From: Sminthopsis crassicaudata
Taxonomy: Eukaryota
Direction: 5' to 3'
Length of the DNA stretch: 64,000 nucleotides
Assembly: GCF_048593235.1 (NCBI RefSeq)
Contig: NC_133619.1
Coordinates: 330,164,454-330,228,453, forward strand
The notes under the pieces: generated by a model
Database searches by the model: none
Told to the model about the DNA's origin: nothing
The model's input: the letters and a program-made list of their open reading frames with translations, nothing else
Part shown: piece by piece, positions 42,101 through 64,000 of the stretch
Numbering within the stretch: the first letter of the stretch is position 1
How the letters are laid out: every line of letters starts with the position of its first letter
Translations under genes and position numbers: made by a program

Positions 42101-43836
42101 ATTATTGCAGTGACCCATAAAAAAGAATTCTCTACACAGTAATTAAATAAAAGACTGTAGGCTAATATTATATGTAAAAACAATCTTGGTATAGTTTTAA
42201 CCTTTAATAGCTTAAAGAGCATAGCTTTAAAAATGTACTAAGACTTTTGGGACACCCTATATGTTCCAAAAGCTCGTCTAAATTTTACAAGGAATTTTTT
42301 TTAATGAATCCCGGGGTTCTGGACTCAAATTTCTTATATGTTTGGCCATTCAGGTTGTCTAATTGGGAATCCACCACAGCTGACCATTACAGTACCCAGT
42401 GGGTTTCAGTCAGAACTTGCAAAGATTGATTGAACACATAGCTTGGTAATCCAGGACAAGGTCCAGATCCCCTGAAAGGGTAATACCTTATCAGCTCTAA
42501 TTTTAAGAAAACTTATCAAGAGTTTCCATCATAGAGTCATCAAGGCCCAAAGAATGTCATTTAACTTTCCACATAGTCACTTGAGATACAATCAGACAGA
42601 ATCTAAGCAAACTCCAAGGACTCACCATTGGCCAGTCCACACTTGCTACACAAGCATTAAATGGACCCATAGACAAAGTGGGTTAAAAAAACAACTTTTG
42701 TTCACCAAGAGTTTCTATTTGGGGAAAAAGGGGGTGAGGAACAGTTAATAATAGGTAATAAATGAACAACAAAATAAACAATAATAAAACCAGTGTCTCT
42801 ATAGATTTAAAACACAATTTCTTTTTTCATGTCCATGCCTGTGATTTCATTGGTGTAGAGAATTCGCATTGAAGAAACTTCTCCTACCAATACAAATCTA
42901 TACTTGTTCTATGTTTTATAGACTTAGAGGGTTGTCCATAGTACTAATAGTGGATTAAATATATTAAGATAAGCCACAAGTTCATTTCAATTCAAATGTA
43001 TTTATTCAGTCCAAGGGGACTGATCTGCAAATCCAATACATGGCATTAAATTGGGGGTTCATCAAGTCAAGAGGCCTAGAAAAAAGGATAAATCAGTGAA
43101 AAGTGACTTACCTCGCAAAGCATCCCCTGGGAAGCTGTGGTATGGAATAAGGGTCCTATAGACCCCAGAAGAGAGAGAGCTCGGAGAGTACTGGGAACTG
43201 AGGCCTTGGAAGCTAGTCCTTGGAGAGTTTGAGGGGCAGGGTGAAGGGGAGTGAGGCATGAGTATGAAATTATACATAGGAATCACAAAGTAAACCAATC
43301 CATCATCTGCCCCCATAACACTATCTAGAACAGTGTTCATAACATAGCAGGTATTCATTAAGTGTCCTGTGATCCTTCCAATTTTACACTAGAAAGAACA
43401 TTAGCTCTGAACCCAAAGGACCTGGTTTCAGACCCCATCATGATTTTTACTACCAGTGTGATCTTGGACTAATCACTGTAAAATTTGTAAATTTGTAAAA
43501 TGACTCAATGGCCCTGCTTCTTCCTTCCAATTCTGTATATGTGATCCTGTATGGGCACAAAAATAGAAATACAGATTTTTTTCAATAAAACATATTCATA
43601 CTTTAACAACAATGTATTTTTTAAATGAAAATTATGGTATTGGAATGTTCCATTAGGTTAGTGAAACAAAATCTTCAGAATGTTTCAGCAATTTGGCATT
43701 TTTGAGAATGGCAGCTATAAATTGAATGCTAGGTGCACATTGAGTACTGGGCTGGAAATTAGGAAGACTCATCTTGAAGAGTTCAGCTCCAACCTAAGAT
43801 ACTTGCTAGCTGTGTAGACCTGGGCAAGTCATCTAT

Positions 43837-44233: not shown

Positions 44234-45534
44234 ATCTATAAAATAGACTAGAGAGGAAAATAACAAACCATTGCAATATCTTCCTCCCCAGTAGTATTTT
44301 ATTTTTCCAACATTCATTTTTGTAACTTTTTGTTCCAAATTTTTCTTCCTACATCACTGCTTCTTCTCTCTCTAAGACAGTGATCAATCTGATATAGATT
44401 AAATATACATTGCAGTATATTTGCCAAGAAAATCCCAAATGGAGTCATAAAGAGCTAGACATGACTATAGCAATTCAACTACAACAACAACTAAAAACTA
44501 CGTACACATGCACAAAGTTCATATTCATATAGTACCCGCTTTCCAGGTAAATGAGCTCCCAGATAACCCTTGTCTCACACTCATCTCAATTGTGTTACCA
44601 GTTCAGTTTCAGAGTTGCTCCTCAAACATAATTGCCCCTGAATAGCATTTTCTGTTTTCTAATAACACTTAGAGATCCACTTAAACTGTCATGGTTTCTA
44701 CTTCTTTCTCTATATGTCAATTATATAGACAATTCCATAATATAGTCAGCAAAGAGTCATTGATCACTACATTAAAGGGGGAAAAAAAGCCTTAAAGGAC
44801 ACTTGCTCATTCAACAAGTTTTTTTTTAAAGCATCTGTGTTGCTTTAGGGACTATGCTAGATTTTTATATAGTCCTTTCCTTAAGGGATTTGATAGGTGA
44901 TAAGAAAAGCTGAATAAGTTTCTAGGATCTCTTATTTCCATAAGGAAAATAACATGTACACAACTAGAACATAAGATATTCTACGGATTTTATGGGAGTT
45001 CAGAGGAAGGAAACATTACTGTGAAAGAGGCATGGTAGCTTAGTGGAAATGGCATGATGTTTACAGAATTGATGGATTTGGAATCAAGCTTTACCACTTA
45101 ATATCTATGAGACATTGGAAAATCAACTAAGTCCAGTAGACTTGAGTATCACTATTTTCCCCAATGGCACCTCTTCAGACACTATGAATGTGATTTGGGG
45201 AATAACATGGGTGGATGACTTTTACTAATTCCAGAGCATACACATTGGGCATTGGTCCCTTATTCTCTCCTTAGGTCTATAGCCCTGCTGCTCTACTATA
45301 TACTAGGATTTCCAGAGGTATTCTTACTAACTCCATTATATAGAACAGAAGTGTGAAATTCCAGGTCTGCAAGTCACAAGTGGTCCACAAAACTCCTCAG
45401 TTCTTTTAAAGTTTAGAATGTAATCGGAAAATATTTAACAATTTTTTAAAGTAGAATATAAAATATACAATGTTAATTTGTGGCTTTCCAAGTCAATATG
45501 TGTCTGTGGAGATCTGTTTCTATTAGATCATGGC

Positions 45535-47000
45535 ATTCAGGTAACCCAATAATTCTTAGATTGTCTCTACTGGATTTATATTCCAGGATTTTATATTTTC
45601 TTCTACCTTTTCATTTTTTTGATTGATCTTTGTTGTCTCATTGAGTCATTCTCTTCCATTTGTCCAATTCTAATTTTTAGTGAATTATATTCTTCAGTTG
45701 GCTTTTTTTTAACCTTCTTTTGCATTTGATCAATTGTACTTTTAAAGTATTGATTTTTCAGTATATATATTTTTCCATTTTGTCAAATTTGTTTTTAAGA
45801 AGTTCAATATATTTTCCCATTTTGCCAAATTTATTTTTTAAATTGGTTTCTTCAGATAATTTCTGCACTTCCTTTTCTAAGTTGTTGGTTTTTCCTCTCC
45901 AGACTTTCATAGTTCTTCATAGTTCATAGCTTTCATTTCTTTCCTCCATTTTTCTTCTCTCTTATAAGATCTTTTTTGAGCTCTTCCAAGAAAGCCTTTT
46001 TGAGATTGAAACCAGTTCATAGCCCTTTTGAGACTTCACATGTGGCATTTTGCCTTTGTTTCCGGGTTTCTGTTCTGATCTTCCCTTTTACCATAGTAGG
46101 TTTCTATGGTTAGAGCTCTTTTTGCTTTTTTGCTCATTTCTAAAAGTTGACCTCTGTTCCTAGGGCATAAGGAANNNNNNNNNNNNNNNNNNNNNNNNNN
46201 NNNNNNNNNNNNNNNNNNNNNNNNNNNNNNNNNNNNNNNNNNNNNNNNNNNNNNNNNNNNNNNNNNNNNNNNNNNNNNNNNNNNNNNNNNNNNNNNNNNN
46301 NNNNNNNNNNNNNNNNNNNNNNNNNNNNNNNNNNNNNNNNNNNNNNNNNNNNNNNNNNNNNNNNNNNNNNNNNNNNNNNNNNNNNNNNNNNNNNNNNNNN
46401 NNNNNNNNNNNNNNNNNNNNNNNNNNNNNNNNNNNNNNNNNNNNNNNNNNNNNNNNNNNNNNNNNNNNNNNNNNNNNNNNNNNNNNNNNNNNNNNNNNNN
46501 NNNNNNNNNNNNNNNNNNNNNNNNNCAGTCTTTCACAGACTTTCCACTGAGCTGGAGCCAATTGTGCTGTAGGCTCTCCCATTGTCCTAGGTTGCCTGGG
46601 ATTCAGAGACTTACAATTTGTCTTCTGTGGTTGTTTTGGAGGTCTCACAGCTGGTTGCTGATTCACTGGCCCTATGAACCAGGACAGATTAGCCAATGTT
46701 GCTGTACTTTGGCTAACAGCATCCCACTAGATTCCCTGTCCAGACCTCCCCACACTAGGCCTCCCTGCACCTGACTTCCCTGTTCTGTGCCTGCACTAAG
46801 CTGTATCGCCGCCTGCCCAATTCAGACTGACTTTTCCTAAAGTCCTTCCAAGATATTATAAGCTGGAAAAAAATTACACTCTGAATGTTTGTGGGTTCTG
46901 TCATTCCAAATTCATTCAGAGTCTTATTCTAGCATTGATTAAAGCTGGGGAGAGCTCAGGCAATGTCCTGTCTTCTCTCTGCCATTTTGGCTCTGCCTCT
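45535..47000 (-). mobile_element. Old L1/HAL1 5' UTR-ORF1 portion (spans a gap)
   Basis: T-rich antisense ORF1-like sequence, ending in the 5' motif ctgccattttggctctgcc. Confidence 0.65.
46175..46525. other. Assembly gap (351 N)
   Basis: Run of N inside an L1. Confidence 1.
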
Positions 47001-47619
47001 GACCTGTTTCTATTTGAGTTTGACTCTATTAGGGCAGAGTGAATTCTTTCTGCTTACTTATGATTAGTGGAAGCAAGTGAAGATTTAGACAGCTCAGAAT
47101 TTAAGTGAACCAATTGCAACAAAGACTATCAGAACATGTGGTGGATTACCATAAACAAGTAGCCCTAGCAATTGGGCACAGGTCTGATTACTTGAGGGAA
47201 CTAGAAAAGTAATATCTACCAATTCTAGAAAGGTGTGATGCTGTAAAAGTTACAGAACAAGACTCCTGCTCAGTTACTCTTTGGAGAGGCAATAGTGGTC
47301 AACTTGAGCAGCCCCCAACTTTCCAACAATTATTTAATATATACTCAATGGTATGGGCAATGAGTTCTAAGGGAAAAAAACACACATATAAAACATTTTC
47401 ATAATTCCCATCAAGGTATATGACTAAGCCAAATTAGAACAAAATTCTAGAGTGATAATAACATCACATCCTAATTTTACTAGACATAGCTTCACATTAG
47501 ATCTTGTGTTCTTTCTGCTTATTAAAATGGTAACACTGAATGAAGAAATGAATGATTAAGCGTTTAATATACATTTACTATGCTCCAGATGTTAAGAGAA
47601 AAATTTTTTGTTTAATCTG

Positions 47620-48520
47620 ATTAATGAAGCAAAACTTAGGATAAAGACGATTAAAATGAGTCTCTTGTGAGTATGTCAAGGTTTCAACATGTTAGCAGGC
47701 TGATCACTGGAAATAAAGCTTTAAGGTGGGGTCAGCTTTTATAGGTAACTTTCATAAAGAGATATTTCATAATAAGATTGTTCCACATCAGCAACAGAGG
47801 CTGGGTTCTTGTATTTCAGTTCTTCCCCAAGATAGCAATTATGTGACAATTTCTATATATATTCAAGTCGGACAAAACTTGATGCTGTCCCCCCAACCCT
47901 GATTTACAAGCAGAGATGGAAATAATGGTCATTGAGTCAACATAACTTTCAATAAAACACTGTGCTGACATTAAGAATATAAATACAAGCAAGATAATCT
48001 CTACCCTGAAGGAGTTTACATTCTGACAAGAGGATATAACAAATAAAAGTGTATTGGAAAAGGTAGGGAATATCTGGATGGCAAATAAGATGGAGGTCTG
48101 GTTTCCAGCAAAATAAAGGGTGTGCTCTCCTATTAGAGCCTAACATCTCAGGAGTAAAGCCCAAGGTTGGGAAGGAGATGAGGAGAATGGCAGCAGGAGG
48201 AATAGCCTGGTTTGGAGAAAGCATCTGCCTAGGAAAGGGGATTCTTTTATTTAGATGTAAAAGAGAAACTGGGAACCCCAATCAGAAATTTCCTTCTAGC
48301 ACTGAACAACCTCAATCATAGTGAAAAATCCATAAGAAAGAGGGGTCTGAAGGAAAGCAAGGGAAAGGAGAAAGAATAAGCCATCTTGATCAACATCTAT
48401 TATCACTCTAAGGTGGGGATAGAGCTGTGATAAAAACCTATTTTATCAACAATACCCAGAACTGGAGTTGTGCAGCAAGATCCAACTGATCCAATCAATT
48501 TACAGAATTTTTGTTCTCAG
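47620..48520 (-). pseudogene. Gypsy integrase core and C-terminal remnant
   Basis: FITALSPP (cf. DFITDLPP), KMAYSF (cf. KMAHF), ISDWGSQF (cf. VSDRGSQF), MKYLFMKVTYK/KLTP (cf. TKNLxLKVPSKKLAP), RLYPKF (cf. RIHPVF). Confidence 0.7.
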
Positions 48521-49089
48521 TGTATATTTCATAGATAAATGTTATTTTTGTTAGTGTTGTTAGTTGTTAGTGTCCCAACTTTGGTTAACAAAAATCATAA
48601 GAAATTCTGCAAGACATTGAATGGCTTTCTGTGACCCACCACCATACTGTCATGACTAATCATCATCATCATCCCCTGAACCTGGGTTCTTTTCAAATAA
48701 TGTCTCATTTGTGATTCACAATAACCTTATGAGGAAATGCTTTTATTATCCCAATTTTGTAGTTGGGGAAACTGAGGCAAGCAGAGGTTGTTAGGGTTTT
48801 TAAGTGTCTTACCCAGAATTACACAGCTAATAAGGACATTATCTGAGGACACATTTGAAGCTCTTCCTGACTCCAGACCCAGCACTCTACCACTTGCATG
48901 CCCAAAGACAGCAGAGATAGAACTTTGTCAGGAAAAATGTTAAGGCAGGCAGAAGTTCAAGAGCCCATCCAATATTGACTCTCCTCCAGGAGGGTCATTC
49001 CTTCTCCTCTAAATTTAAGCACAATGTCCATGAATTAAAACATTAAAAACTTCATAACCTAATGCAGAAAAGCAGAAATATTTGTTACA

Positions 49090-49400
49090 ACATAGCATTT
49101 TCGCTCTTTTTGTTGTTTGCTTGCATTTTGTTTCTTTCTCATTTTTTTCCCTTTTTGATCTGATTTTTCTTATGTAGCATATTTGTGGAAATGTGTATAG
49201 AAGAACTGCACATGTTTAACATATAGTTTATTACTTGCAGCCTAGGGGAGGGGATGGAGGAAAGAGAGAGAAAAAATTTGGAATATAAAGTTTTGGAAGG
49301 ATGAATGTTGAAAGCTATCTATGCATTTGTTTTGAAAATAAAAAAAAATCTTTAAAGAAAAAAATGAAAAAGAAAAAAATAAAAATAAAAATAAATTTAA
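49090..49400 (+). mobile_element. L1 3' UTR fragment inserted in the Gypsy fossil
   Basis: catagcattttcgctc...ttgatctgatttttct...aaaaaatttggaat...tttgaaaataaaaaa plus A-rich tail. Confidence 0.8.
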
Positions 49401-49863
49401 GTACAAGTATCCCTTCCCAAGCTCTATGAATATACTTCCTCTTCACCCAATCTCTTCCATTAGATCAGAGATTTCCTGATACTCCTTGCTTTGACCTTCC
49501 GCCAGCTCTTTTATTCATGTTATTATTCTCTATTTCAGCCAAACTCACCTGAATCATTCTGCCCTCCCCAGAATATGAACACACTTACCATTGAACACAC
49601 CCAGAAAGTAATCTCTGCTAGCACATGCACTCAGTACCAGCTTCAAAATAATGTCTATAGTCACCTAAGTACTTCCAATAATTATTCACAAAAAAGTAGA
49701 TGAAAATTCTTACTGAAAATGCTGGAACCTAACAATAATTATCACATACCTTTTGCTAGAAAATTAATTTTTAAAATAACTGATGGAATTTAATTGATTG
49801 CAAAGTTTTGGGGGTCTATATTCCTAGATAATTCAGGTTTTGAATGAGCACATCTATCCACAA

Positions 49864-50110
49864 ATTGTATTGTCCAGCAACATAGATAATAAGGAAGTTA
49901 GACCAACTGGGAAATACTGCTCAAGAGATCTGTCATTGATTGAGTTGGTCTATAGTTATTCTATGTCTAGAAAATGGAGGAAACTACACCATTCAAGTTA
50001 GTACCTTTATACCTTACATGTAGCTTTTATTGTGAACAATCATTACACATTTTTCCAGATTCCAAAGTTCCTTTCTATGTCACTCAAATTATAGGAAAAG
50101 TATATATCAA
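49864..50110 (-). pseudogene. Gypsy RNase H remnant
   Basis: YFSYNLSDIERNFGI...LFTIKATCKV*RY*LE...LNQ*QIS*AVFPSWSNFLIIYVAGQYN (cf. YFSRKLSPAERNYDI...LLAIKAAFEEWRHWLE...[27 protein letters not shown]). Stops fall at expected Trp/Arg codons. Confidence 0.85.
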
Positions 50111-50687
50111 GTCATGTCATGGAGTACAGCACATGGAGATGGGAAAAGAATCACTTCCAGATTGTACTATTTCTATAAGGAGGAATAAAATTAAGATGAG
50201 AGCTAAATAAAAATAATTCATTAAATGCAGTCAGCACTTCTGATGTTCACTATATAATGTCTTGTGGTGCTTTTACAGATCTCTGGGAGATACTGTCCAA
50301 GGTCAGATCCTAGGATGGAATGATACTACCATCTGAGTAAAGACAAAGATGAAAGGAAGAGAAAGAAAAAGAAAAAAAGGGGTGGATCATTTAAGTGGCT
50401 ACTATATGGCAGCTAGGTGGTACAGTGGACAGAGTGCTGGACCTAGGATCAGAAAGACTCATCTTCCTAGATTCAAATCTGGCCTCAGACACTTCCTAGC
50501 TGTGTGACACTGCACAAGTCATTTAACCCTGTTTGACTCAGTTTCCTTACCTATAAAATTAGGTGGAGAAGTAAAGGGCAAATCACTTAAGTATCTTGGC
50601 CAAGAAAACCCCAAATGTGGTTACAAAGAGTCAGACACAACTGAAAAACAATATAACGTCATATTAACTAACTTGTTACTCACAACA

Positions 50688-50855
50688 NNNNNNNNNNNNN
50701 NNNNNNNNNNNNNNNNNNNNNNNNNNNNNNNNNNNNNNNNNNNNNNNNNNNNNNNNNNNNNNNNNNNNNNNNNNNNNNNNNNNNNNNNNNNNNNNNNNNN
50801 NNNNNNNNNNNNNNNNNNNNNNNNNNNNNNNNNNNNNNNNNNNNNNNNNNNNNNN
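50688..50855. other. Assembly gap (168 N)
   Basis: Run of N at an L1 3' end. Confidence 1.
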
Positions 50856-52202
50856 TGGTACATTGCATGGGTGATGTTTTACAACATTATCCCTTGCACT
50901 CCTGTTCCAATATTTCCCTTCCTTCCCTCCACCCCCTTCCCTAGATGGCAAGCAGTCTTATACATGTTAGATATATTATAGTATATCCTATGTGTACATA
51001 TGTGTACATATGTGTATATGTGTACAGAACTGAATTTCTTGTTGCACAGGAAGAATTGGATTCAGAAAGTAAAAATAACATGGGAAGAAAAACAAGAATG
51101 CAAACCGTTTACACTCATTTCCCAGTGTTCCTTCTCTGGGTATAGCTGATTCTGTCCATCATTGATCAATTAGAACTGAATTAGATCTTCTCTTTGTCAA
51201 AGATATCCACTTCCATCAGAATACATCTTCATACAGTATTGTTGAAGTGTATAATGATCTCTTGTTCCTGCTCATTTCACTCAGCATCAGATGATGTCTC
51301 TCCAAGCCTCTCTGTATTCATCCTGCTGGTCATTTCTTACAGAGCAATAATATTCCATAACCTTCATATACCATAATTTACCCAACCATTCTCCAATTGA
51401 TGGACATCCATTCATTTTCCAGTTTCTGGCCACTACAAAAAGGGCTGCCACAAACATTCTTGCACATACAGATCCCTTTCCGCTTCTTTAGTATTTCTTT
51501 GGGATATAAGCCCAGTAGTAGCACTGCTGGATCAAAGGGTATGCACAGTTTGATAACTTTTGGGGCATAATTCCAGATTGCTCTCCAGAATGGCTGGATT
51601 CTTTCACAACTCCACCAACTATGTATTAGTGTCCCAGTTTTCCCACATCCTCTTCAACATTCATCATTATTTGTTCCTATCATCTTAGCCAATCTGATAG
51701 ATGTGTAGTGATATCTCAGAGTTGTCTTAATTTGCATTTCTCTTATCAATAGTAATTTGGAACACTCATATGAGTGGAAATAGTTTCAATTTCATCATCT
51801 GAAAATTGTCTGATCATATCCTTTGACCATTTATCAATTGGAGAATGGCTTGATTTCTTATAAATTAGAGTCAGTTCTCCATATATTTTGGAAATGAGGC
51901 CTTTATCAGAACCTTTAACTGTAAAAATATTTTCCCAATTTGTTACTTCCCTTCTAATCTTGTTTGCATTAGTTTTGGTTGTACAAAAGTTTTTTTAATT
52001 TGACGTAATCAAAATCTTCTATTTTGTGATCAATAATGATCTCTAGTTCTCCTTTGGTCATGAATTTCTTCCTCCTCCACAAGTCTGAGAGTTTACCTAT
52101 CCTATGTTCCTCTAATTTATTTATGATCTCGTTCTTTATGCCTAAAACCTGGACCCATTTTGATCTTATCTTGGTATGTGATGTTAAGTGTGGGTCCATG
52201 CC
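50856..52202 (-). mobile_element. Relatively young L1, ORF2 C-terminal part and 3' UTR (3' end runs into a gap)
   Basis: Minus strand reads MDPHLTSHTKIRSKWVQVLGIK...FMTKGELE...FDYVKLK (L1 ORF2), followed by a dasyurid-type 3' UTR. Confidence 0.9.
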
Positions 52203-52334
52203 TAATTTGGCAGACAACAGTTTAATGACTTGCCCAGGGTCTACAGTGAAGAAGAAGAATTTAAAAAGTCTGAGACTGGATTGTAATTCAAGTTTTCCTG
52301 ATTCTAGGTCCAGTGCTCTTTTCAATGTTCCACT

Positions 52335-52552
52335 TAGGTTTTTCAAGATGGCAGGAATCCTCCACTGTAGTACGGTCTCCACATAGATTGGTTTCATATA
52401 GACTCCCCACCGACTGTTTGTGTGCCCCAGTAATTCCATCTCCTCCTTAAAATGGCATTTGTCCAATTCAGTGAATAGCTAGTGCTCCCTCAGGCTCTGG
52501 CAGATGCCCAGATCAATTGAGTGTTCTTGGCAAGATAGTGGGAGTAGGTAAG

Positions 52553-52597
<45 letters not shown>

Positions 52598-53209
52598 CTC
52601 AGAAGGTCCTATTTGGCAATTGTCACTAACTACTTCTACCAGTCAATCAATTAGACTGAATAATATAGTTGAGAAAACTAGTCCCAGAAGGTGATAATAT
52701 TCTATTTCTATAGCTAATCCAGAGCTTCACCTCCCCATTTTTTCATTTTAATAAATTTTGAAATAAAATTTAATTTAAAATAATTTTTTAAATAATAAAT
52801 TTAAAATAATTTAAAATAAAATTTAAAATATTAAAATTTCACTTTAATAAATAGTAGTGGGACATCTACATGACACAGTAGATGGAGCAATGAGCTTGGA
52901 ATTGGAAAGACTCATCTTAAGTTCAAATCCAGCCTCAGACAGTCATTGGACAAGTCACTTCACCCTATATGCCTGAATTTCCTCATCTGTAAAATGAACT
53001 GGAAAAGGGAAGTGATAAAGTGCTCCAATACTTTGTCAAGAAAACTCCAAAATAGGATCACAAAGTGTCAAACATGACTGAAATGGCTGGGGCTCCATTT
53101 TAATGGGAGAGGCAGAATGGTAGACAAAAGCCATCTTGGCATTCTTTAGCAAGAACTCCATCAAAGGTATCAAAACTGTCCTGGACAATGAACATATCAA
53201 GATAGCAGG
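52335..53209 (-). pseudogene. Gypsy reverse transcriptase remnant
   Basis: ICSLSRTVLIPLMEFLLKNAKMAFVYHSASP (cf. IYSLSxxExxxLxEYIxENLxKGFIRPSxSP); FIKMK/NGEVKLWISYR (cf. FVKKKDGSLRLCIDYR); CQSLREH*LFTELDKCHF..EMELLGH (cf. LQRLREHQLFAKLEKCEF..EVEFLGY). Confidence 0.85.
52555..52594. repeat. (GT)20 microsatellite
   Basis: Perfect dinucleotide run inside the Gypsy RT remnant. Confidence 0.97.
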
Positions 53210-53419
53210 AAGCACAGTAGGTAGGTTACAGGGCTTGGATTTAGAGAAGACTTGAATTAAAAATCTACCTACTAGCTAACATGACTATGGACAAATCACT
53301 TAACCTTTCTACCTTCATTTTACTCATCTGTAAAATGCTGGGAATGGAGAAATCTACATCACAGGATTGTTGTGAGATTAAATAAAATGATATTTTTTGC
53401 AAAGCCTTTTATAAACCTT

Positions 53420-53720
53420 AAAAACTGATTTCTGTTAAACCAGACATTAAAGAGATTTATGAAAATAGGTAAAATAATACCATCTTCTCCCCAAAATGTT
53501 TTCTTTGGAAAACATGGTTATTCTTCACAAACATGTCTTCTTTACGTAATATTATTTTTAATATTTTAATAATGTTAACATTTTTAAATCAAGATTTTTA
53601 CATTTTAATTTCTAATATGGTAAATATTGATAATCTATATAACCTAAAATTCTTTAAGCCCCTTGATTATTTTTAAGAATTTAAAGGGATTCTGAAAACA
53701 AAATAGGTTGAGAATTATTG
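53420..53720. mobile_element. hAT-Charlie-type DNA transposon remnant
   Basis: ttttaatttctaatatggtaaatattgata...tttaagaatttaaagggattctgaaaacaaaataggttgagaattattg resembles the end of mammalian non-autonomous hAT elements (from memory). Confidence 0.55.
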
Positions 53721-55129
53721 TTGTAAGGAAACTTATGATAAGGAACTATATTCTGTCAAAGCAGATCAACAACAAATACCCCCTACATAAAAACTTAGGG
53801 AACTGCTTAGGATATTTGCCCAAAGTCACATAGCCAATATTGTTAGAGGCAAAACTTGAAACTATATCTTCCTAAATCCAAGACCAAGTCTCTACCCACT
53901 AACTGACATTGACACCTAAATACAAAAATAAAATAAGAGGGGGAAAATTGAAGCATATCAATGATTTCCTCAAAAGAACAGTTTTGCAGTCAGAAGCAGA
54001 TGCACTTTGTCCAACTAGCCACCTCAACACTAGTCTTTAATCCCCATTCATAGCTCCCTCATTCTGCCCTGAATCCCTTGTTACCCATCTGATTTTCTCT
54101 CCATTTGGATTTCTCCAACAATGAAAGGCATAGCCTTTAACCATTCTAGCTTATGATTCTTTCTCCCTTTCACTCCCTCCCCACTATTAGTCCTTTTCCT
54201 TAAACAGGAAGATCTTCTCACCATGAGACTAAAAATCACCGAATTCATAGTTAAATTGCATCTCCTTTTCTGAAGATTTTGTGTAGATCAGATCAAATAT
54301 TCAAGTACCAGGTTATATTCTCCTCTCATGCTTGGAGCTTTGCAATTCTTCAAAAAACTAGCTGGGGGTACATTCAGTATCTGAAATTATACTACATAGA
54401 ATCAAAATATACATTAATGCTTAACAAAACAAATTGTTGTAGCTATCATGCACCAGTAATATAAACAATAACTATGGAGCAATCACGGGAAGTGATTACA
54501 ATTCTAAATTACATGCAGGACATAATATGTACATATGTCATAAAAGTACATAAAAGTATTATATCCATATAATAAAATAGATAGAAGTAACATTAAGCAA
54601 AATTAAATTAATAATATCATTAGTAGGCTTACAAAAATGTGAAAAATAAGCAAAACTACACACAAATAATAGCAAAATCACAAATAGTTATCAAACGACT
54701 TTAGCTTCAACACATACATGACACAAATATGTAAATAGAAACAATAATAATAGCAAAGCATAGTTAGTAAGTAACATGCATACCAATGAACATATGCAAT
54801 TGCATGCAAGACACATTAATTACATGTTGAGAATTAGCACAGTTGTCTGGTTTTATGTGAAACCACTTTGCCAATTTTCCTTATAACATTCATTATAAAT
54901 TACTCTGGCCACTGGTCATATAGGCTTAGCTTTCATGCTTTCATGCAACCTATCTGCCCCTGTACCTGAGTTAATTGATAGTAAGAACTGGTTATAATTC
55001 TCAGAATAATTATAAATTCTCAGCATAACTATAGTCTTACCTACTTAAACCTAAACTTGCCATGCTCTTTCCTGAAGTAAAAAGTGAGTTCACACCGTTC
55101 CCATCATTTGAACTGGGGGTGCAATACAT

Positions 55130-55990
55130 AGAGTGATCTCACTTGAAAGCCTGATTCAGAGCCAATTTTTGGGCTGGGCTGACTTTGCATGATTAATGGG
55201 CATTTTATTTCACTTAATCTTCTGAGGAAAGAGGCCATCAATCTTTGCTTATTCATCAACGATTCTAACCAATGTACCTCTTGGCAAGTACAGATCACAA
55301 TGGTATATATGTCTTTAGTGGGCCCTCACCAGTCTCTGGGGCTGTTTTATAAACTAATAAGTTGTTCACTCTCTCCAGAGGCATAAAGTAGCTTTCCTTC
55401 AACTTGTACATCCAGCAAACACCAAGATTTCTCAGCAAAATTCTGTCATCTTGTTGAAGGCTTTGAAAACTTACTCAGACATCATATTATCATTTACTTC
55501 TTTCAATATTTTATTTCACCCAGACTGGAATCATTTCACTCAGACTCTCATAGACTCAATTTCATTTAATCTGATGTGAATGGAAATTTTAACCTGTTTC
55601 ATTTCCATGCCCTCCTTAGGTAACCTAAGCTCTCAGATCTCAAGGGTTCCCTATACAACTGCCAGAGTTAGTATGGATGCCAAATTGTCTTAATAGAGTG
55701 AAGCTTGGAACTCAGGTGATCCACCAGCCTCAACCTTCCCAGTAGTAGTTATTACAGGAGTATTCCATGATACTTTCAGCATTCTTCTGGATTGAAATTG
55801 TAACAAGGCGGTGAATTTATTTTTGCTTTTCCCTCTTCTAAGATATATACTGGTTATAAGTGTCTGTAAATCTCTCCATCCTAAGAACTATAAAACACTT
55901 TGTAAGTGGATAGGTATAGCTCAGACCCCAACATCAACAGATAGGGATAAAACTGGTGAGATCGCTCCTCGTAGAAATGGATACTCGTAT
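55130..55990 (-). pseudogene. Gypsy gag (capsid) remnant
   Basis: ELYLSTYKVFY (55890-55922); FQSLQQDDRILLRN...LKESYFMP...TGEGPLKTY...LA/QEVHW...LMASFLRRLSEIKCPLIMQSQP. These resemble RTL1/PEG10 gag (QLTLQSYPRMFY; LLQENSPL; QGxGSVxDY; IAQDLDW; GLNEEIRHYLFRVPQP). Split by a 7SL retrocopy. Confidence 0.65.
55495..55775 (-). pseudogene. 7SL RNA-derived retrocopy
   Basis: Minus strand ctcctgtaat...actgggaaggttgaggctggtggatcac...taggttacctaaggaggg...ggaaatgaaacaggttaaaa...ttccagtctgggtgaaa aligns along 7SL (cctgtagtcccagctactcgggaggctgagg; aggttgcctaaggaggg; ggaaacggagcaggtcaaaa; ctccagcctgggcaa). Confidence 0.75.
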
Positions 55991-56079
55991 ATGGAAAGCC
56001 ACATATTGTCTCTATTGAGATTTTTGCTCAAATCCTCACATCTCTAACATATTCATCAGTAAGCATTTAAAATGATGAA

Positions 56080-57620
56080 TAGTATTTATAATTTTGTTAC
56101 ATTTACTTTTGTTTTGGAGGGGAGGGGATGTTCTTTCCACTTAAATTGTTGTAGTTACTGGCTATATTGTTTTCTTGACTCTTCTATCTTCATACTGCAT
56201 CATTTAATACAAATTTTTTACTGCTCCTCTTACATGCTTCATCATGCACATCATTTTCCCCCAGAACAGTAATATACTAATACATTTCCCATTCACACTT
56301 TTAAATTATTCCCCATTTGATGATGATGTTTTGTTTCCAAATGTACTGGAGTACAATTTTTTTTTATTAATGATTTCCTTGAGTTACAAGCCCAGTATTG
56401 GAGTCTCTGTTCAAAGGATATGGGAATTTTAATTATTTTATTTGCACAATTCTAGATTGCTTTCCAAAGTGGTTGTACCATTTCACCAACATTGACTATG
56501 ACATTTTTAGGTCATTTTTGCCAGGTTTTCAAAGCGTAAGGTGAAACTTTAGTGTTATTTTGATTTGTATCTCTCTTATTGTGATATATATTATATTATA
56601 TCATATATATAATAAGACAATATTATCTTATTACTTGTGATTTGGATAATTTTTTTCATGTGTTTGTGAAAACTTTCCAGTTCTTTTGAGAACTGTTTGT
56701 TCATATCCTTTAACCATTCATCTGTGGGGGAATAACTATACACACACATACACACACACACTAACACAGATATATGTATATATGTACACACACATAAATA
56801 TATGTACATATACAAATATTTTTATATTGCTTGGTACCAAACTCTTAACAGTGAAATTTCTTGCAAAGTTTCCCCCTCCAACATTTGACCACTTAGCTTC
56901 TTATCCTAAACGTACTAATATTGTCTATGAAGTAGCTTTTCAATTTCAAATCATCAAAGTTATATAGTTTATATCTGGTAATTGCTTCTATCTTTTCGTG
57001 GTTAAGAATATATCTCTCAGATGATTCAGGTCAATTCTAATGATCTTGTAATGAAGAGAGCCATCTACACCCAGAGAGAAGACTGTGGGAACTGAGTATG
57101 GATCACAACATAGCATTTTCACTTCTTTTTGTTGTTGTTTACTTGCTTTTTGTTTTCTTTTTCATTTTTTTCTCTTTGACCTGATTTTTCTTGTGCAGCA
57201 AGATAATTGTAAAAGTATGTATGCATATATTGGATTTAATATATATTTTTACCATATTAACATATATTGGATTACTTGCAGTCTGAGGGAGGGGTTAGGA
57301 GAAGGGGAGGAAAATTGGAACATAAGGTTTAGCAAAGGTCAATGTTGAAAAATTGGCCATGCATATGTTTTGAAAATAAAAAGCTTTAATAAAAAAGAAT
57401 ATATCTCTTATCCAAAACTGTGATATACATTTTGTTTCTCTTTAAAAAAAATTTATGCTATGACCTTTAATAATAAAGTTGCATATGAACTGAGGGTAAA
57501 TTATAGAGTATGGTATAAGGTGTTGGTCTAAACCTTTCCAGTTTTCCCATCAGTTTTATGAAATGAAAAGTTCTTCCGTAGGTGATTTATGTTTCCCACT
57601 TCATCAAATACTGCGTTATT
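56080..57620 (-). mobile_element. Old antisense L1 with a younger sense L1 tail nested at ~57020-57394
   Basis: Antisense ORF2-end motifs. The nested insert has TSD aagaatatatctct at 57004-57017 and 57395-57408. Confidence 0.75.
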
Positions 57621-58651
57621 GAGTTATCCTTCTATTGTCTTTTTATTCAGGTGCATTCACCAGAATGGCACTTTGATTCTTTGGTATCATCACATTTATG
57701 CTCACATTACTTCAAAGTCTCACATTAGCCAATTGCTCTCTTTGCCAGTCACTCATAGACAACTGAGGCAAAGAAAATCAGCTCAGTAGAAAGAGGTTCA
57801 CACAGGCTGTTGTCATGCTGTCAAGCAGAACTCTCAAACTTTCAGTTGTACTGTCATGTACTTTTAATCCATCTCCTCGGGTGTTTCACACAGTTTTCAC
57901 CATCACATAGTCTTCTAATTGGTCATCTCTCTCCCAATTATCCTCCCTTGACCAATGGTGGATGCTGAATTCATAGTTGGCTAGCACTGGCACTTATCTA
58001 AGACAAAAAGCATCTAACTTTGCACTAATCAGAATACAGTAGTGGACTTTCCACATTTGCAACTTTACTCCATATACATATAGTTGTTTTGACTTTGAAG
58101 TTGTTGGTGACAGTCTACTTCAAAACCAAAAACTCTAGCTTGTGTTAGGGATAATGAATCTTATTTAAAGTTTATTTTAAAATATTGGCAAAGATTTTGA
58201 GTGACTAATGTATGAGAAATCATTTAGAATTTTCTCATTTCAAATTTCTTGGAGGAATTTGAATTAGAATAAGGTCCTAAAAATCTATGATCCTATGATC
58301 CAAAGAGGACATCAGTACACGATCCCTATTTTTTCTTCCTATTTGGCCTTCCTGGGACTCAGTCTAAACAAGTCAGTCTTCAGTTCTAGGAATGGGCCCA
58401 GGAAAAACCACTTAATTATTGCATAAGTGTCTAGTCTGCCAACTCAATTCTTACAGTAACCTGGTTCAAAGAAGGAAAAAAAGGTTGCTGACAGTGGGAT
58501 TTTTACTTGAGGCTTTTTTTTTTTTTTTTTGACTAAACTATTCACACTTTCTTTCCCAGTAATGCTTATGACTAGAAGAGTCTTTCTGTAAGATGACTAA
58601 CTTCAGAGTATTCCAGATAAGGAAGAGATTATATGCAAAAGACGTTTTCAG

Positions 58652-59329
58652 TGTAGCAACTCCTTTCCAAATAATGAGATTGAAGATATCAAATATTGGA
58701 ATTTGGTCACGTAAAGAATTCACAATGACATTGGTTTTGGCAAAAGATAGGTTTATTTATGAGAAGAGGTTACAGACAAAATGAAGGGATACAATAGAAA
58801 CCAAGAGTGTTAAATATGAAATAGAGTTGGGAGAACATGTAGTGTAACAGGAAAGTGATTTTTAACGATTAACAATGAAAAAGACAAATTCTAGTGGAAC
58901 TCACAATTAACCAGGAGAAAGGAAGTATTCCATGAGGTGGAAGTATGCCTTTCACTGGCAGGCTAAATCCATAGAGAGATTTAGTAACCTGAAAGAATTA
59001 GTTAGCTAAAAGAAGAAGAAAAGACACCCTGAGGCATGGTGAGGGGATGAGAACACCCATACTGTGGGGAATGTGGGAGGGGTGAGGAGAAAGTATCATG
59101 AGGCAGAAAGCTGGGGCAAACTGACCCAAAAGGGGTTCGGCAAAGATGGCATGAGCCATGGACAGATTTAAAGGGGAAATTTAACCTCAGGGATTTGACA
59201 TAACTTGAATTTTTAACTGGACACAGCAAAATGGGTCTACCCAAGACCCTCTACAGAGAGATTATAAGGTTAAACTGATCCCCATCAATACCCTTCCCTT
59301 CTTGCCTCAGGAAGTAATTTTATTCGTAC
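58652..59329 (-). mobile_element. Solo ERV LTR
   Basis: Starts tgtagc, candidate 5-bp TSD ttcag on both sides, minus-strand AATAAA (tttatt ~58752). The terminal CA is imperfect. Confidence 0.6.
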
Positions 59330-60954
59330 TTCAGGCTCTTTCTCTGCCAACCTGTGAAATGCTGAAAAGCTGGGTTTCTACAGATTGGTGAAAACTTCAA
59401 GATAATGTGGGATAGTGGGTACCACTGACCAAGAGGTTTTCAGAATGTGAGAGGTTAAGGAAGGTTAAGATTCCACAGAACAATTAAGTGATCAATAGAA
59501 GTCTTGAGCAAACAAGGAATTGGGGGGATAAAAAGGTAGAGGTGGATTCACCTCATCAGAAAGAGTCTTATGGGTTTAAGAAAACCACAAATTTAAGATA
59601 ATAGCCCATCCAGCCCAAACTAGTTGAGTCAATGACCCAACTTGAACAAATCACTACTGAGCCTGCTTAATAAGCTAATTGAATATTAAACAACACATCC
59701 TGCAGGAGACTTTTCTGCCGTTTTTTAACATGGGACGTATGATGAGGAAGCATAAACATATTTAGGGGGAAACATATGGTGGGCATATAAGAAAGATTGT
59801 AACCCAAAAGGGAATGGACCAATTCAGTCTTTGAAGAGACACTTGTGCTATATTTGTGCTAGCAAGTATAAAGTTCTCCCATTTCTGTGCTCAGAACTTT
59901 GTTTTACCAAAGAGGTGCAGAGTCTGCTTCTGGACAAAAATGTTAAGATGATTCCTTAAGATTTTTCTTTAATAAATTTTCCTTGATATTCTGATTGTCA
60001 GGATCAAGAGTATTTCTAACAAACCCCACCTAGTAATCCAGGACCTCATCACAAAGGCAAGTAAGGATCTCATATCCAGCATGGTGAAACCTAAGCTTGG
60101 GTAGAGCGCAAGAACAGCTGTCAACAGTTCTATTACTTCCCAATTCCAAATCACAAAGTCAGGGCAGACTGAGTAATTCTATAGTGGGGGAGGAATGGGG
60201 GTACACTCACAGAGAGGGAGAGGACATTCCAGGAAGAGGAGCAGCCTTGTTTATTTGGTACTGTATCCAGCAAGGAGAAAGTTCAAAAGTAAGCAATAGC
60301 TGTATAGAACAAACCCCAGCAATAAGATTGAGTCTCAGTTCCAGGTTTTAGTTCGGTCTGAAGTCTGCAGAGAAATAACAAAGAAAGGAATAGAGACCAA
60401 AATGGAGTCTATAGCTTCATCATATTGAATCAGCAGAGCTTTCAAGAAAGCTAGCTAACACTAGCCACATTCACTGAAATTGTAAAGGGGGCAAGCCCAT
60501 AGGCAAGTTGCTCAGTCCTAAACATAAATAAATAATTTACAGTGGTGGAAGAAGGGAAACAGTAATGACTTTGCCTAACATTACACCACTTTTAGACTTC
60601 TGAAAGTTCCTAGCTATTCAGATCCAGGAATAATACAACACTAGGTAGGGCCTGCACTAAAGTGTTTGTAATATCAGGAGAGAGAAGGGGCATATTTAAG
60701 AAATATTGCAAAGGTGAAATCAATAGGCTTGGATTATTGATATAAGAGATAAGAGATGGTGAGGAATCCAGGATGACTCTTGGATAGCAAACCTGAGGGA
60801 CCCAGACAAAGGTGGTGCCCTCTATAGAAATATGGTAAGTAGGAAGGGGGAGGATTTAGGGGGAAAGATAGAGTTCTATTTTGGACATATTGAATTTAAA
60901 ATCTCTATTGGATATTACAATGTCTCTGTAGACCTTGAAATTACTAGGTAAACT

Positions 60955-63900
60955 TGTTGTGTCCTGCTTTCTAGAGCCCCTAAGCTGGGGTGACAAAACA
61001 TACTGTGCTTGATTTTTGATGGAGATGCACTGGTTCTGTGAGAATCCATGTGGGGGTGGTTAAAATATACCTTCCTAGTGAAGGAGTGATGAGGTGGGAC
61101 TCCTGAGGAAGGTGAAAATATTCAGTCTGTTTATTCCAAGGACTTTACCCTTTTTATACCCTCATGCCCTTGTGTAACAAAAACACTGGGCATGTGCCCA
61201 GTATATACTGTGCACGTGGGACCACATAAACAACTTGCTATTGTATGTAGATTGCCACCTGGTATTACTCTGCTTCAATCACAACACAGGTTGTCACCAT
61301 CCTGTGCCGAACCAGACATTGTCAGCAGGTTCCCTCTGGACTGAGGGTCTTATACCTCACCCAGATTTCCCCCAGTATCTGTGCCTCTATATCTCACCTT
61401 TTCTTTTGTTTTAATTGAAGCAGGTATCTAACAGTGGTTAAATCCATTACCAAGGGAGGAAGCACAAGGCAAGTTGTAATATCACACAAGCAAGTAGTAA
61501 CATAACAAACAATATGAATAAACAAAATACTATAAAGATTTCCATGAGTCCCAGAAGGAAGGAGTAAAAAATTATTATGAATTCATAAGCACATATATAC
61601 CTCCTTCAGGAGCCAAGAAATAGTCCAAAACCAATCTATAGTCCATTACTTCACGTGTCAGAGAATCCAATGATTCCTGCAGTTTTTGAAGTCCTGCATC
61701 AGTCTCATTCACAATTATTTTTGATGTTCATGAGTCAATTGTCATACATGTACATGGCATACAATTATGCCATACATAACTGCCAGACTCTTTCAGTGGC
61801 ATACATAGTCAGAGACTGAACCACCCAATGTTTCCTGGGTCTTCTCTGTTTTGAGAGTCTTCTCCTTTTCTGTCTCTCTCTGATGGACAAGGTGAATACG
61901 GCTTGTTGGCACCCATCAGGTTTCTTCTCCATTTGTTGAGATATAAGCAAACCCTCTCCCCCAAGCAGTTAACCTATCTGGTCCCTTCCATTCACCACTT
62001 TCTGGATCTCTCCACAAAACCTGGCAATTATCTAATTATCACATTGAACACTACCTTTCTGGCAGGTTATAAAACCTGTCTTCCAGAGCCAGTGCCTCTC
62101 CATCAAAAATCAAAAAAAAATTAATAGTATAAAGAGCTAAATTTAAAAGTTCTCTAAGGTTACCTGTGGCTCCTCCTTTCTTTAATTTTTGGAGGAGTGT
62201 CTTGATGTCTCTTCCCCATAGATTGATGGGGATTTTTTTTTAACTACAAAAAGAGTAAAAACTCCTGTTTTATCTTCAAATTTCCATCTCAAAGGGGTAG
62301 CACTAATTTTAGCTGCTGTTGATTTAGCTGCCAGACACATGAGTGTTTGCCATAATCTTTGGCCAGTGACTGGGATATCAGCTACACATCTCCCAGTTTC
62401 CCAAATCAGTGTATGGATGGACACTGTTTTGTAAGCACTCTCAGGATATGAAATGGTCAAGCCTACTGTGCTTGGAAGCAAAGGATCCATGGGCCTGACA
62501 GGGACAGGTTTCAGCTCTCCAGGGGATATCTCAGTAGTCCCAGCAACATACAACTCTATTCTCCCTGATTGCAATCTCCTTCCCCTACCAGCTTGCTTAA
62601 AGACTCTCTGGGTATAACAGGAGTTGCCATCATGCCCCAAGTGTTTTTTTTGCATGGGGCCCTGGAGCTGAGTCCCACCTCTTGTAATTAGGACTTAGGG
62701 GGTGGGCAAAACTGCTCATGGGCAGTGCTGATGGCATCATTACCTCTTCCACTCTCCTCCCCGTGCCCATGAAGGTGGAGTTGAGGGAGGAGGGTCAGGA
62801 GATAGGGAATACTCTAAAGGTGCATGCTCAGATATAAGCAGAATTGAAAATGAGCTTTGAAGGTGAAAAGCAAGTTCATCAGCAAGGTACTTTTCTGCCC
62901 AACAGTCAATGGTACTTAAGATACAACTCTTTTCTCACCCAACTGGCCAAGCCCTGCAGATCTCCTAGAGTAGTAATTAGCAAATTAAATCAGTAAAATG
63001 CTTAAAAAAAAAAAAAAAGACTTCCTTAGCTCTGCCCCACATGCTATACTCTCTAGGGTTATGGGCACCAACTCTCTGCTTGTTTTTCTTCTCATGTTTC
63101 CTAGTCTGGCAGCCCAAGTTAAAATCTTTCCTCTTTTTTAAACTTGTAAGATTCCTTAAAACCAATTTCACTCCATTGTATTCAGTTTGTTGTTCTCCTA
63201 CTATCTCCCACATCTCAGGCTCCAATCTCTCCTTCTTGGAGAGAGTGCACTTGGAAAGGTGCACTTCAGAGCATCTGAGAAGTGATCTGTTTCTGAGTTA
63301 CTAACAAACCTTGCTTCATACTTCCCTTGGAGGAAGGCTCTTTTCTTAGTATTCGCCTCATTTTAGTTGAAAAACGAAAGTGACTAAATTAGTCCTTACC
63401 TATTCTTCCCGATTGCCTATTTCTATACTTACCCTATTCCAGGTCACAAGGACTTCTCCACTGAACTCGGCCAATCCCTTCAGTAGAGCTGCTGTGTGTA
63501 GGACCTCACCTAGAGCCCCATGTTGGGTGCCAAATGTTGTGTCCTGCTTCTAGAGCCCCAACACCGGGGTGATTAAAATATTGAGTCCTTCTTTCTAAAG
63601 TCCCCAAGTTGGGGTGACAAAATGTACTGTGCTTTGTAGAGCCCCCACACGGGATGATTAAAATATCCTGTCTTAGTGGAGGAGTGATGAGGCAGGACTT
63701 CTGAGGATGATGGAAAAATGGAGTCCATTTATTACAAAATCTTTCCTCTTTTTATACCTTCATATCCTTATGTAACAAAAACACTGGACATGTGCCCAGT
63801 GTGTATGTGGAACCACAAACAACTTGCCATTGTATGTAGATTGCTATGGTATCACTCTTCCACCTGCTATCACTCTGCTCCAATCACAACACAGATTGTC

Positions 63901-64000
63901 ACTGCTCTCTGACTTCTCAGGAAGGCAGAGAGCTCTTAGGGGAGATGGGGAGCTGAACCAGACATTGTCAGCAGGTTCCCTCTGGGCTGAAGGGTCTCAC
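60955..64000 (-). mobile_element. Internally deleted betaretrovirus-like (ERV2, type D-like) provirus, 5' LTR cut by window end
   Basis: 5' LTR 63535->64000, PBS 63515-63532, splice donor GGTAAG ~63400, gag MA remnant from ATG 63361 (EMWEIVGEQQTEY), dUTPase-like ~62370-62575, integrase 61880-62215 (VLWRDPESGEWKGPDRLTAWGRGFAYIS at 61937-62020), env TM remnant 61575-61709, PPT 61397-61412, 3' LTR 60955-61396 with TG...CA termini. Confidence 0.88.
63515..63532 (-). promoter_or_regulatory. Retroviral primer-binding site, tRNA-Lys(1,2) type
   Basis: Minus strand TGGCACCCAACATGGGGC, 2 nt after the LTR end. It equals the MPMV-type TGGCGCCCAACGTGGGGC with two CpG-decay changes. Confidence 0.85.

What the first reader, a model, noticed from the sequence alone, without database searches (positions are those of the whole stretch)
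47250..56000. Near full-length fossil Ty3/Gypsy (sushi/RTL-like) retrotransposon hidden under younger repeats
Seen by manual minus-strand translation, all in the correct Ty3/Gypsy order. gag: ELYLSTYKVFY 55890-55922; TGEGPLKTY 55307-55333; QEVHW...FLRRLSEIK. Protease: INSG 54964-54975 where DSG is expected; LQA*EENITW ~54300. RT: MEFLLKNAKMAFVYHSASP ~53100-53160; NGEVKLWISYR 52707-52740; LREH*LFTELDKCHF 52450-52495. RNase H: YFSYNLSDIERNFGI 50058-50102; LNQ*QIS*AVF...IIYVAGQYN 49864-49944. Integrase: KMAYSF 48370-48387; ISDWGSQF 48266-48289; KVTYK/KLTP ~47730-47755. RNase H before integrase is diagnostic of Gypsy rather than Copia. Established: mammals lack active Gypsy elements and keep them mainly as domesticated genes (PEG10, RTL1 and other SIRH/Mart genes, PNMA, ARC) and as very old interspersed relics. 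Inference: a rare gag-to-integrase fossil of the family that seeded SIRH/RTL genes. The ORF track shows only two short pieces of it. It may correspond to an already catalogued MamGyp-type internal sequence, which I cannot check.
Basis: partly seen in the sequence, partly recalled or inferred. Interest (0 to 1): 0.85.

Follow-up and report, generated by a model that had tools for sequence, protein, structure and literature searches.

The report
Scattered Ty3/Gypsy pol relics, not full-length
The region holds genuine but badly decayed pieces of ancient Ty3/Gypsy retrotransposon pol, from at least two separate relics cut up by L1 and SINE insertions. It is not one near-complete gag-to-integrase element, and dead relics of this kind are already known in mammals.

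Summary
All the quoted peptides exist at the stated minus-strand coordinates. Only one is significant on its own: the RT thumb at 52544-52335 (phmmer E 1.8e-8 to 5.7e-4 against 1.84 billion proteins; all seven hits I checked are Gypsy-type pol, matched at the RVT_1/RT_RNaseH_2 junction).

Four more blocks score best at the expected pol position and lie in the right order: NGEVKLWISYR, YFSYNLSDIERNFGI, IIYVAGQYN and ISDWGSQF. Each is at noise level alone. The two RNase H blocks fall on the diagonal predicted from the thumb once the SINE+L1+gap+SINE cluster (52338-50400) is skipped (p 0.003-0.006 post hoc; 0.04-0.2 in broader tests).

The gag and protease blocks, KMAYSF and KVTYK/KLTP have no support.

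A probable integrase C-terminus at 55486-55310 goes with it and covers the 'gag' block TGEGPLKTY. The two relics are not collinear.

No LTRs, no YxDD palm, no gag or protease were found. The N gap lies between a SINE and an L1 3' end, so it sits inside young inserts.

A sushi/RTL affinity cannot be tested here. Two unchecked notes of this scan report other Gypsy pol fossils elsewhere in this genome. Verdict: ordinary, low interest.

The parts
52335..52544 (-). Relic B: RT thumb/connection. Profile positions about 505-568, at the junction of RVT_1 and RT_RNaseH_2. One in-frame stop at 52479-52481. Cut downstream by a SINE and upstream by a (CA)n run.
   Evidence: phmmer E 1.8e-8 to 5.7e-4. The hits carry RVT_1, RT_RNaseH_2 and rve, with the match at the domain junction. 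tblastn: 73 of 80 panel queries, best 2.8e-7. hmmsearch: 16.0 bits against a control maximum of 2.2.
52707..52754 (-). Relic B: probable start of RT (contains NGEVKLWISYR), profile 380-395. Only about 200 bp separate it from the thumb, so about 50 residues including the catalytic palm are missing.
   Evidence: Best profile position is the expected one: 12.3 bits against 6.4 for the runner-up. The 15.2-bit HSP is at noise level on its own.
53105..53161 (-). Possible residue of the stretch just before the RT start (MEFLLKNAKMAFVYHSASP). Separated from 52754 by a SINE and an AT-rich tandem repeat.
   Evidence: Best profile position 355-373, at only 7.9 bits. Not significant. Derivation from a SINE could not be shown either.
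50058..50102 (-). Relic B: suggested RNase H block 1 (YFSYNLSDIERNFGI), profile 670-684.
   Evidence: 14.2-bit HSP. It lies on the diagonal predicted from the thumb after skipping 52338-50400. Together with block 2, p 0.003-0.006, but 0.04-0.2 in broader tests.
49846..49899 (-). Relic B: suggested RNase H block 2 (contains IIYVAGQYN), profile 744-761.
   Evidence: 16.0-bit HSP. Its spacing to block 1 is 56 aa against 63 profile positions.
48266..48462 (-). Possible integrase-core remains of relic B: 48462-48412 at profile 971-987, and ISDWGSQF at profile 1014-1021.
   Evidence: 14.6 and 11.4 bits. In order, but at noise level and about 80 residues off the predicted diagonal. Absent from the tblastn hits.
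52208..52338 (-). SINE fragment (5' part) that truncates the RT thumb.
   Evidence: Read directly against the SINE copy at 50400-50660. The family name was not checked in a repeat library.
50856..52208 (-). L1 3' fragment: ORF2 C-terminal part plus 3' UTR.
   Evidence: Matches human L1 ORF2p residues 946-1197, E 2.4e-8, 5.5e-20 and 4.6e-17. 50865-51570 is multi-copy in the window.
50688..50855 (.). Assembly gap, lying between the L1 3' end and a SINE.
50400..50660 (+). Full-length MIR/CORE-type SINE.
   Evidence: Five other copies in the window; sequence read.
52860..53090 (+). SINE of the same kind, next to an AT-rich tandem repeat at 52764-52837.
57925..58165 (-). Relic A: RNase H, profile 681-759, about 80 codons without large indels. 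Stops at 58145-58147, 58115-58117 and 57994-57996. One frame change between 58094 and 58080.
   Evidence: Pair score 49.8 bits. Control maxima are 36.5 (reversed sequence and other strands) and 31.1-38.1 in 24 simulated strands. tblastn: 69 of 80 queries, best 4e-4.
55310..55486 (-). Relic A: probable integrase C-terminal (SH3-like) stretch, profile about 1157-1220.
   Evidence: tblastn: 19 of 80 queries, best 0.008. hmmsearch i-E 0.23, with nothing comparable in the control. Collinear with the RNase H at 58 kb. Not significant alone.
59586..59825 (-). Possible RT thumb of relic A (weak).
   Evidence: 41 of 80 queries, best E 0.076. 20.7-bit HSP at profile 572-582. Noise level on its own.

Best explanation
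The stretch holds dead, very old remains of Ty3/Gypsy (Metaviridae-type) LTR retrotransposon pol genes on the minus strand. They come from at least two separate relics, not one near-complete element.

Relic B runs from about 53.16 or 52.75 kb down to 49.85 kb, and perhaps to 48.27 kb. It keeps a clear RT thumb, a probable RT start, two suggestive RNase H blocks and at most traces of integrase. It has lost the RT catalytic palm. A SINE+L1+gap+SINE cluster of about 1.9 kb splits it, and further SINE, L1-like and microsatellite sequence interrupts it.

Relic A runs from 58.17 kb (perhaps 59.8 kb) down to 55.31 kb. It keeps a clear RNase H and a probable integrase C-terminus.

Both once encoded the enzymes that copy the element's RNA into DNA (RT, RNase H) and insert it (integrase). 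Today they are non-coding debris with stops and frame changes, and nothing suggests a function.

Shown: the Gypsy-type identity of the thumb and of the RNase H at 58 kb; that these two are not collinear; the young inserts.
Inferred: that the weaker blocks belong to the same two relics, and that the relics are ancient.
For: Thumb.
RNase H at 58 kb.
Non-collinearity: profile 681-759 at 58.1 kb lies upstream, on the minus strand, of profile 505-568 at 52.4 kb.
Integrase C-terminus at 55.4 kb.
Reader blocks at the expected profile positions and in order.
RNase H pair of B on the predicted diagonal.
Young inserts.
No stop-free piece of either relic exceeds about 50 residues of pol-like sequence.
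Mammalian Gypsy relics are an established class: PMC5753468, PMC9004415.
Against: Outside the thumb and the 58-kb RNase H, every block is at noise level by itself.
- A loose collinear chain downstream of the thumb is no better than chance (p 0.6).
- The masked full-length chain is marginal (p 0.04-0.2).
- The favourable p 0.003-0.006 depends on placing the insert boundary at 50386-50400. With 50338 it is 0.14.
- The integrase C-terminus does not survive correction for 80 queries.
- The search profile was built from fish and frog elements about 40% identical to these relics, so sensitivity is low in both directions.
- No LTRs delimit either relic, so 'two elements' rests on order alone.
Confidence: 0.6

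Rival explanations
1. One reading: a single near full-length Gypsy element, gag to integrase, spanning 56.0-47.25 kb under younger repeats.
For: Five blocks (RT start, thumb, two RNase H, one integrase motif) are in Gypsy order on one strand. The RNase H blocks fit the diagonal predicted from the thumb.
Against: No support for any gag or protease block. INSG is not the D-S/T-G motif. The 'gag' zone matches integrase C-terminus instead. The RT palm is missing. No LTRs were found. The integrase blocks are at noise level and absent from tblastn. Only about 1.9 kb lies between the integrase-like stretch at 55.3 kb and the RT start, and about 1.1 kb of that is needed for the protease-to-RT part alone.
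Confidence: 0.1
2. There are only two small isolated Gypsy crumbs, about 210 bp of RT thumb and about 240 bp of RNase H. Every other block is a chance motif picked out by eye from 8.7 kb read in three frames.
For: Loose chain p 0.6. 6-23 equally good block pairs occur per 64-kb strand in controls. Pfam is silent on 20 pieces. tblastn shows none of the RNase H or integrase blocks of B.
Against: Four blocks each score best at exactly the expected profile position. The RNase H pair sits within 3-7 residues of the position predicted independently from the insert boundaries.
Confidence: 0.27
3. The relics are endogenous retrovirus pol (ERV1, ERVK or ERVL), not Ty3/Gypsy.
For: ERVs have the same RT, RNase H, integrase order and are far commoner in mammals.
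Against: None of the seven pol hits I checked, out of 1.84 billion proteins searched, is retroviral. Six of the seven carry Gypsy-type RT_RNaseH or RT_RNaseH_2, and one also carries a chromodomain; their sources are plant, fungus, alga, arachnid and frog. The 58-kb RNase H aligns to 69 of 80 fish and frog Gypsy pols.
Confidence: 0.03

Closest known systems
Ancient mammalian Gypsy repeats of Repbase/Dfam (MamGyp-int with MamGypLTR1-3, LTR85/88/104_Mam, X1-X4_LR)
   Same: Very old, non-coding Gypsy-type relics in a mammalian genome, broken up by later repeats (PMC5753468).
   Different: Membership could not be tested, because no Dfam or Repbase sequences are available here. The two relics show no DNA similarity to each other, so they may belong to different families or be too old to tell.
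Gypsy 'protein fossils' found by frameshift-aware DNA-protein alignment (Frith 2022, PMC9004415)
   Same: Short, stop-ridden pol fragments recognisable only at the protein level, often missed by standard annotation.
   Different: Those fossils were dated by cross-species alignment, and some are conserved or exapted. Age and conservation were not assessed here.
sushi-ichi lineage and its domesticated descendants (PEG10, RTL1 and other SIRH/RTL genes)
   Same: Ty3/Gypsy ancestry.
   Different: Those are intact, expressed host genes derived mainly from gag, with or without protease. Here only decayed pol pieces are seen, no gag, and no lineage placement is possible on 70-80 residues at about 40% identity.
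Active vertebrate Gypsy elements of fish and amphibians (panel P0033-P0129)
   Same: The pol domain order and the motifs of thumb, RNase H and integrase C-terminus align.
   Different: About 30-50% identity over short stretches. Those have open reading frames of 1200-1750 aa; here there are none.

Membership tests
Ty3/Gypsy (Metaviridae) LTR retrotransposon | RT with Gypsy-type thumb/connection leading into RT_RNaseH_2 | tested here: met
   52544-52335.
Ty3/Gypsy (Metaviridae) LTR retrotransposon | RT catalytic palm (YxDD) | tested here: not met
   Only about 200 bp, partly (CA)n, lie between profile 395 and 511. No HSP there. The palm is lost in relic B and was not found for relic A.
Ty3/Gypsy (Metaviridae) LTR retrotransposon | Gypsy-type RNase H downstream of RT | tested here: met
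   Relic A, 58165-57925, is significant. Relic B, 50102-49846, is only suggestive.
Ty3/Gypsy (Metaviridae) LTR retrotransposon | Integrase (zinc finger, DDE core, C-terminal domain) after RNase H | tested here: inconclusive
   C-terminal stretch 55486-55310: best E 0.008, i-E 0.23. Core motifs at 48462-48266 are at noise level. No zinc finger found.
Ty3/Gypsy (Metaviridae) LTR retrotransposon | gag (capsid, usually a CCHC knuckle) and aspartic protease (D-S/T-G) | tested here: not met
   No Pfam hit in the proposed gag and protease pieces. No profile support for the protease blocks. INSG is not DSG. gag itself is not covered by my profile.
Ty3/Gypsy (Metaviridae) LTR retrotransposon | Flanking long terminal repeats, target-site duplication, PBS/PPT | tested here: not met
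   No direct repeat pair brackets either relic within 43-60 kb. The only shared repeats are multi-copy L1 or SINE pieces. Very diverged LTRs would escape this test.
sushi-ichi / SIRH-RTL progenitor lineage | Phylogenetic placement of RT/RNase H within the sushi clade | not testable with these tools
   The fragments are too short and decayed. The best hits are spread over plants, fungi, arthropods and frogs.
MamGyp-int or other catalogued Dfam/Repbase Gypsy family | Nucleotide or profile match to the family consensus | not testable with these tools
   No repeat library is available. Only the literature listing was consulted (PMC5753468).
Endogenous retrovirus (Retroviridae) | pol closer to retroviral than to Gypsy pol | tested here: not met
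   No retroviral protein among the hits I checked.

The most novel reading that the evidence does not exclude
The two relics, together with the other Gypsy pol fossils that first-stage readers noted elsewhere in this genome, are copies of a still uncatalogued marsupial-lineage or pre-therian Gypsy family. Its pol would then be recoverable in outline by comparing copies, and it could sit near the stock that gave rise to SIRH/RTL or PNMA genes.
Probability: 0.08. Interest if true: 0.4.

Novelty: new member of a known kind. Interest (0 to 1): 0.15.

Why it matters
It matters little. Old Gypsy relics in mammalian genomes are an established repeat class, and these copies are non-coding debris.

The useful outcome is a corrected map:
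- Only the RT thumb (52.5-52.3 kb) and an RNase H at 58.2-57.9 kb are secure.
- The claimed gag and protease are not there.
- The locus is not a rare intact-order fossil that could inform the origin of RTL or PEG10 genes.

If a repeat library showed that these pieces belong to an uncatalogued family, they would add a data point to the history of Gypsy extinction in mammals.

Tried and rejected
- **PDB search with the thumb.** It returned only an additive WD40-repeat artefact. Hits P0001, P0004 and P0006 show the same multi-stretch pattern and were set aside unexamined.
- **hmmsearch on pieces and on whole frames with X at stops.** Only three hits appeared: thumb, 58-kb RNase H and 55.4-kb integrase C-terminus.
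- **Loose collinear chaining from the thumb.** No better than random anchors (p 0.6 downstream, 0.65-0.8 upstream).
- **MEFLLKNAKMAFVYHSASP as SINE-derived.** This was my first impression, but a local alignment is no better than shuffles, so I withdrew it.
- **DNA paralogy between 55-61.5 kb and 46.6-53.5 kb** (tandem duplication or same-family copies). The only matches are shared L1 and SINE pieces that also occur elsewhere in the window.
- **LTR search.** Nothing found.
- **Rfam.** Only sub-threshold microRNA-like hits in a TG/TA-rich stretch.
- **L1 identity of pieces at 56.3-56.8 kb.** No PDB match. Only weak DNA similarity to the L1 at 51.5-51.8 kb.
- **Weak Gypsy-like hits at 41-45 kb and on the plus strand at 61.1-61.8 kb.** Not significant.
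- **Scan look-up by sequence.** Blank.


Full report
**Observation.** They are spread over all three frames, and most lie in stop-free pieces shorter than 35 residues. The question is therefore whether they exceed what an eye scan of 8.7 kb in three frames would find by chance.

**The gap.** The N run at 50688-50855 has a complete multi-copy SINE on its left (50400-50660, five other copies in the window). On its right is the 3' part of a minus-strand L1. Stop-free pieces at 52208-51381 match human L1 ORF2p residues 946-1197 with E 2.4e-8, 5.5e-20 and 4.6e-17, and 50865-51570 is multi-copy. The gap therefore lies inside young inserts, not inside candidate Gypsy coding sequence. Continuity and frame across it cannot be known. 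I did not try to fill it.

**The one block that stands alone.** The minus-strand stretch 52544-52335, which includes LREH*LFTELDKCHF, was searched as a 50-residue stop-free piece against 1.84 billion proteins.
- It found seven retroelement polyproteins with E 1.8e-8 to 5.7e-4.
- Pfam places the match in each at the end of RVT_1 or just before RT_RNaseH_2. Three hits also carry integrase domains and one a chromodomain.
- Their sources are cacao, a pseudoscorpion, a green alga, a frog, a fungus and two composites. None is retroviral.
- tblastn with 80 fish and frog Gypsy pols (panel) hits it with 73 queries, best 2.8e-7.
- A profile built from that panel gives 16.0 bits against a control maximum of 2.2.

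The piece has one in-frame stop. It ends downstream where a SINE fragment begins (about 52338) and upstream at a (CA)n run. This is a genuine Ty3/Gypsy-type RT thumb.

I scored each block against every position of the 1293-column profile, with domain positions mapped.
- With the thumb, they are in order on one strand.
- Individually they score 10-16 bits, while chance HSPs in reversed or simulated sequence reach 19-29 bits per strand.
- tblastn does not report any of the RNase H or integrase blocks.

The chain tests give mixed results.
- A loose collinear chain downstream of the thumb is no better than random anchors (p 0.6).
- A sharper test is more favourable. If the independently defined insert cluster (SINE fragment, L1, gap, SINE; 52338-50400) is skipped, the thumb predicts profile position 667 at 50102. 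The observed position is 670, and the second RNase H block is 7 residues off. Such a pair occurs at random anchors with p 0.003-0.006.
- That result depends on the boundary chosen (p 0.14 with 50338). A masked chain over the whole downstream 5 kb gives p 0.04-0.2.

I read the RNase H blocks as probably real, the RT-start block as plausible, and the integrase blocks as unproven. Between the RT start and the thumb only about 200 bp remain where about 350 are expected, so the catalytic palm is gone.

**Blocks without support.** ELYLSTYKVFY, QEVHW, FLRRLSEIK, INSG, EENITW, KMAYSF, KVTYK and KLTP have no preferred profile position and no Pfam signal. INSG is not the protease motif. MEFLLKNAKMAFVYHSASP scores 7.9 bits just before the RT start, and a SINE plus an AT-rich repeat separate it from that start. 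This is compatible with RT but untestable. My first idea that it is SINE-derived failed a shuffle test.

The profile scan found a stronger signal outside the interval.
- At 58165-57925 on the minus strand, about 80 codons align without large indels to RNase H positions 681-759. There are three stops and one frame change.
- The pair score is 49.8 bits. Control maxima are 36.5 and 31.1-38.1 in 24 simulated strands.
- 69 of 80 panel queries hit it, best 4e-4.
- Downstream on the same strand, 55486-55310 aligns to the integrase C-terminal domain (19 queries, best 0.008; one of only three hits in a whole-frame hmmsearch, i-E 0.23).
- A weak thumb-like match lies at 59825-59586 (E 0.076).

RNase H at 58 kb lies upstream, in reading direction, of the RT thumb at 52.4 kb. 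The two cannot be parts of one collinear element. They share no DNA similarity beyond common L1 and SINE pieces.

**What it is.** The locus holds at least two dead Gypsy pol relics in the same orientation.
- Relic A: 58.2 kb (perhaps 59.8 kb) to 55.3 kb.
- Relic B: 53.2 or 52.75 kb to 49.85 kb (perhaps 48.3 kb).

Both are riddled with stops and interrupted by L1, SINEs and simple repeats. No LTRs bracket either. No gag, protease or RT palm is detectable. They are non-functional remnants of elements that once replicated through RT, RNase H and integrase. Whether they were two insertions, a tandem array or a rearranged single copy cannot be decided here.

**Comparison with known families.** Traces of Gypsy LTR retrotransposons are catalogued in mammals: MamGyp-int with its LTRs, LTR85/88/104_Mam and X1-X4_LR (PMC5753468). 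Frameshift-aware searches have found many more Gypsy protein fossils (PMC9004415). The present pieces fit that class. Membership in a particular catalogued family, and any sushi/RTL affinity, could not be tested. Two first-stage notes of this scan report other Gypsy pol fossils elsewhere in this genome (unchecked), which argues against rarity.

**Caveats.**
- My profile comes from elements about 40% identical to these relics, so weak true blocks can be missed and p-values near 0.01 are post hoc.
- The profile was used only as a search device.

**Verdict.** The finding is ordinary and of low interest.

Noticed in passing
window 60955-61350 and 63535-63997: Direct repeat pair about 2.6 kb apart: 72% identity over 357 bp, plus 87-93% over two short flanks. 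It is found only twice in the window. It could be an LTR pair of a small deleted element or two copies of a repeat. Weak plus-strand RNase H-like tblastn hits (E 0.02-0.05) overlap the first copy.
   Followed up: partly
window 41311-41430 (+), 43123-43263 (-), 44871-44957 (-): Weak integrase-like matches to the Gypsy panel: zinc-finger region E 0.012 with 21 queries, core region E 0.017 with 18 queries, and a 19.3-bit HSP. Not significant after multiple testing. They could be further crumbs of Gypsy relics beyond the gap at 46175-46525.
   Followed up: partly
window 49087-49382 and 57019-57396 (also 30615-30971, 21493-21828, 9474-9814, 7226-7385): A multi-copy interspersed repeat at 68-78% identity sits inside both relic regions about 8.0 kb apart and mimics a duplication. 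Its translation gives a chance resemblance to the RT start (E 0.13).
   Followed up: yes
window 56373-56733: An older L1 ORF2-like fragment, 70-79% identical to the L1 at 51493-51846, next to a TG/TA-rich low-complexity run at 56740-56830 that gives sub-threshold microRNA-like Rfam hits.
   Followed up: partly
window 57800-58800: Sequencing runs of seven other coded organisms hold about 10% of the sampled words of this stretch, so related species share at least parts of it.
   Followed up: no
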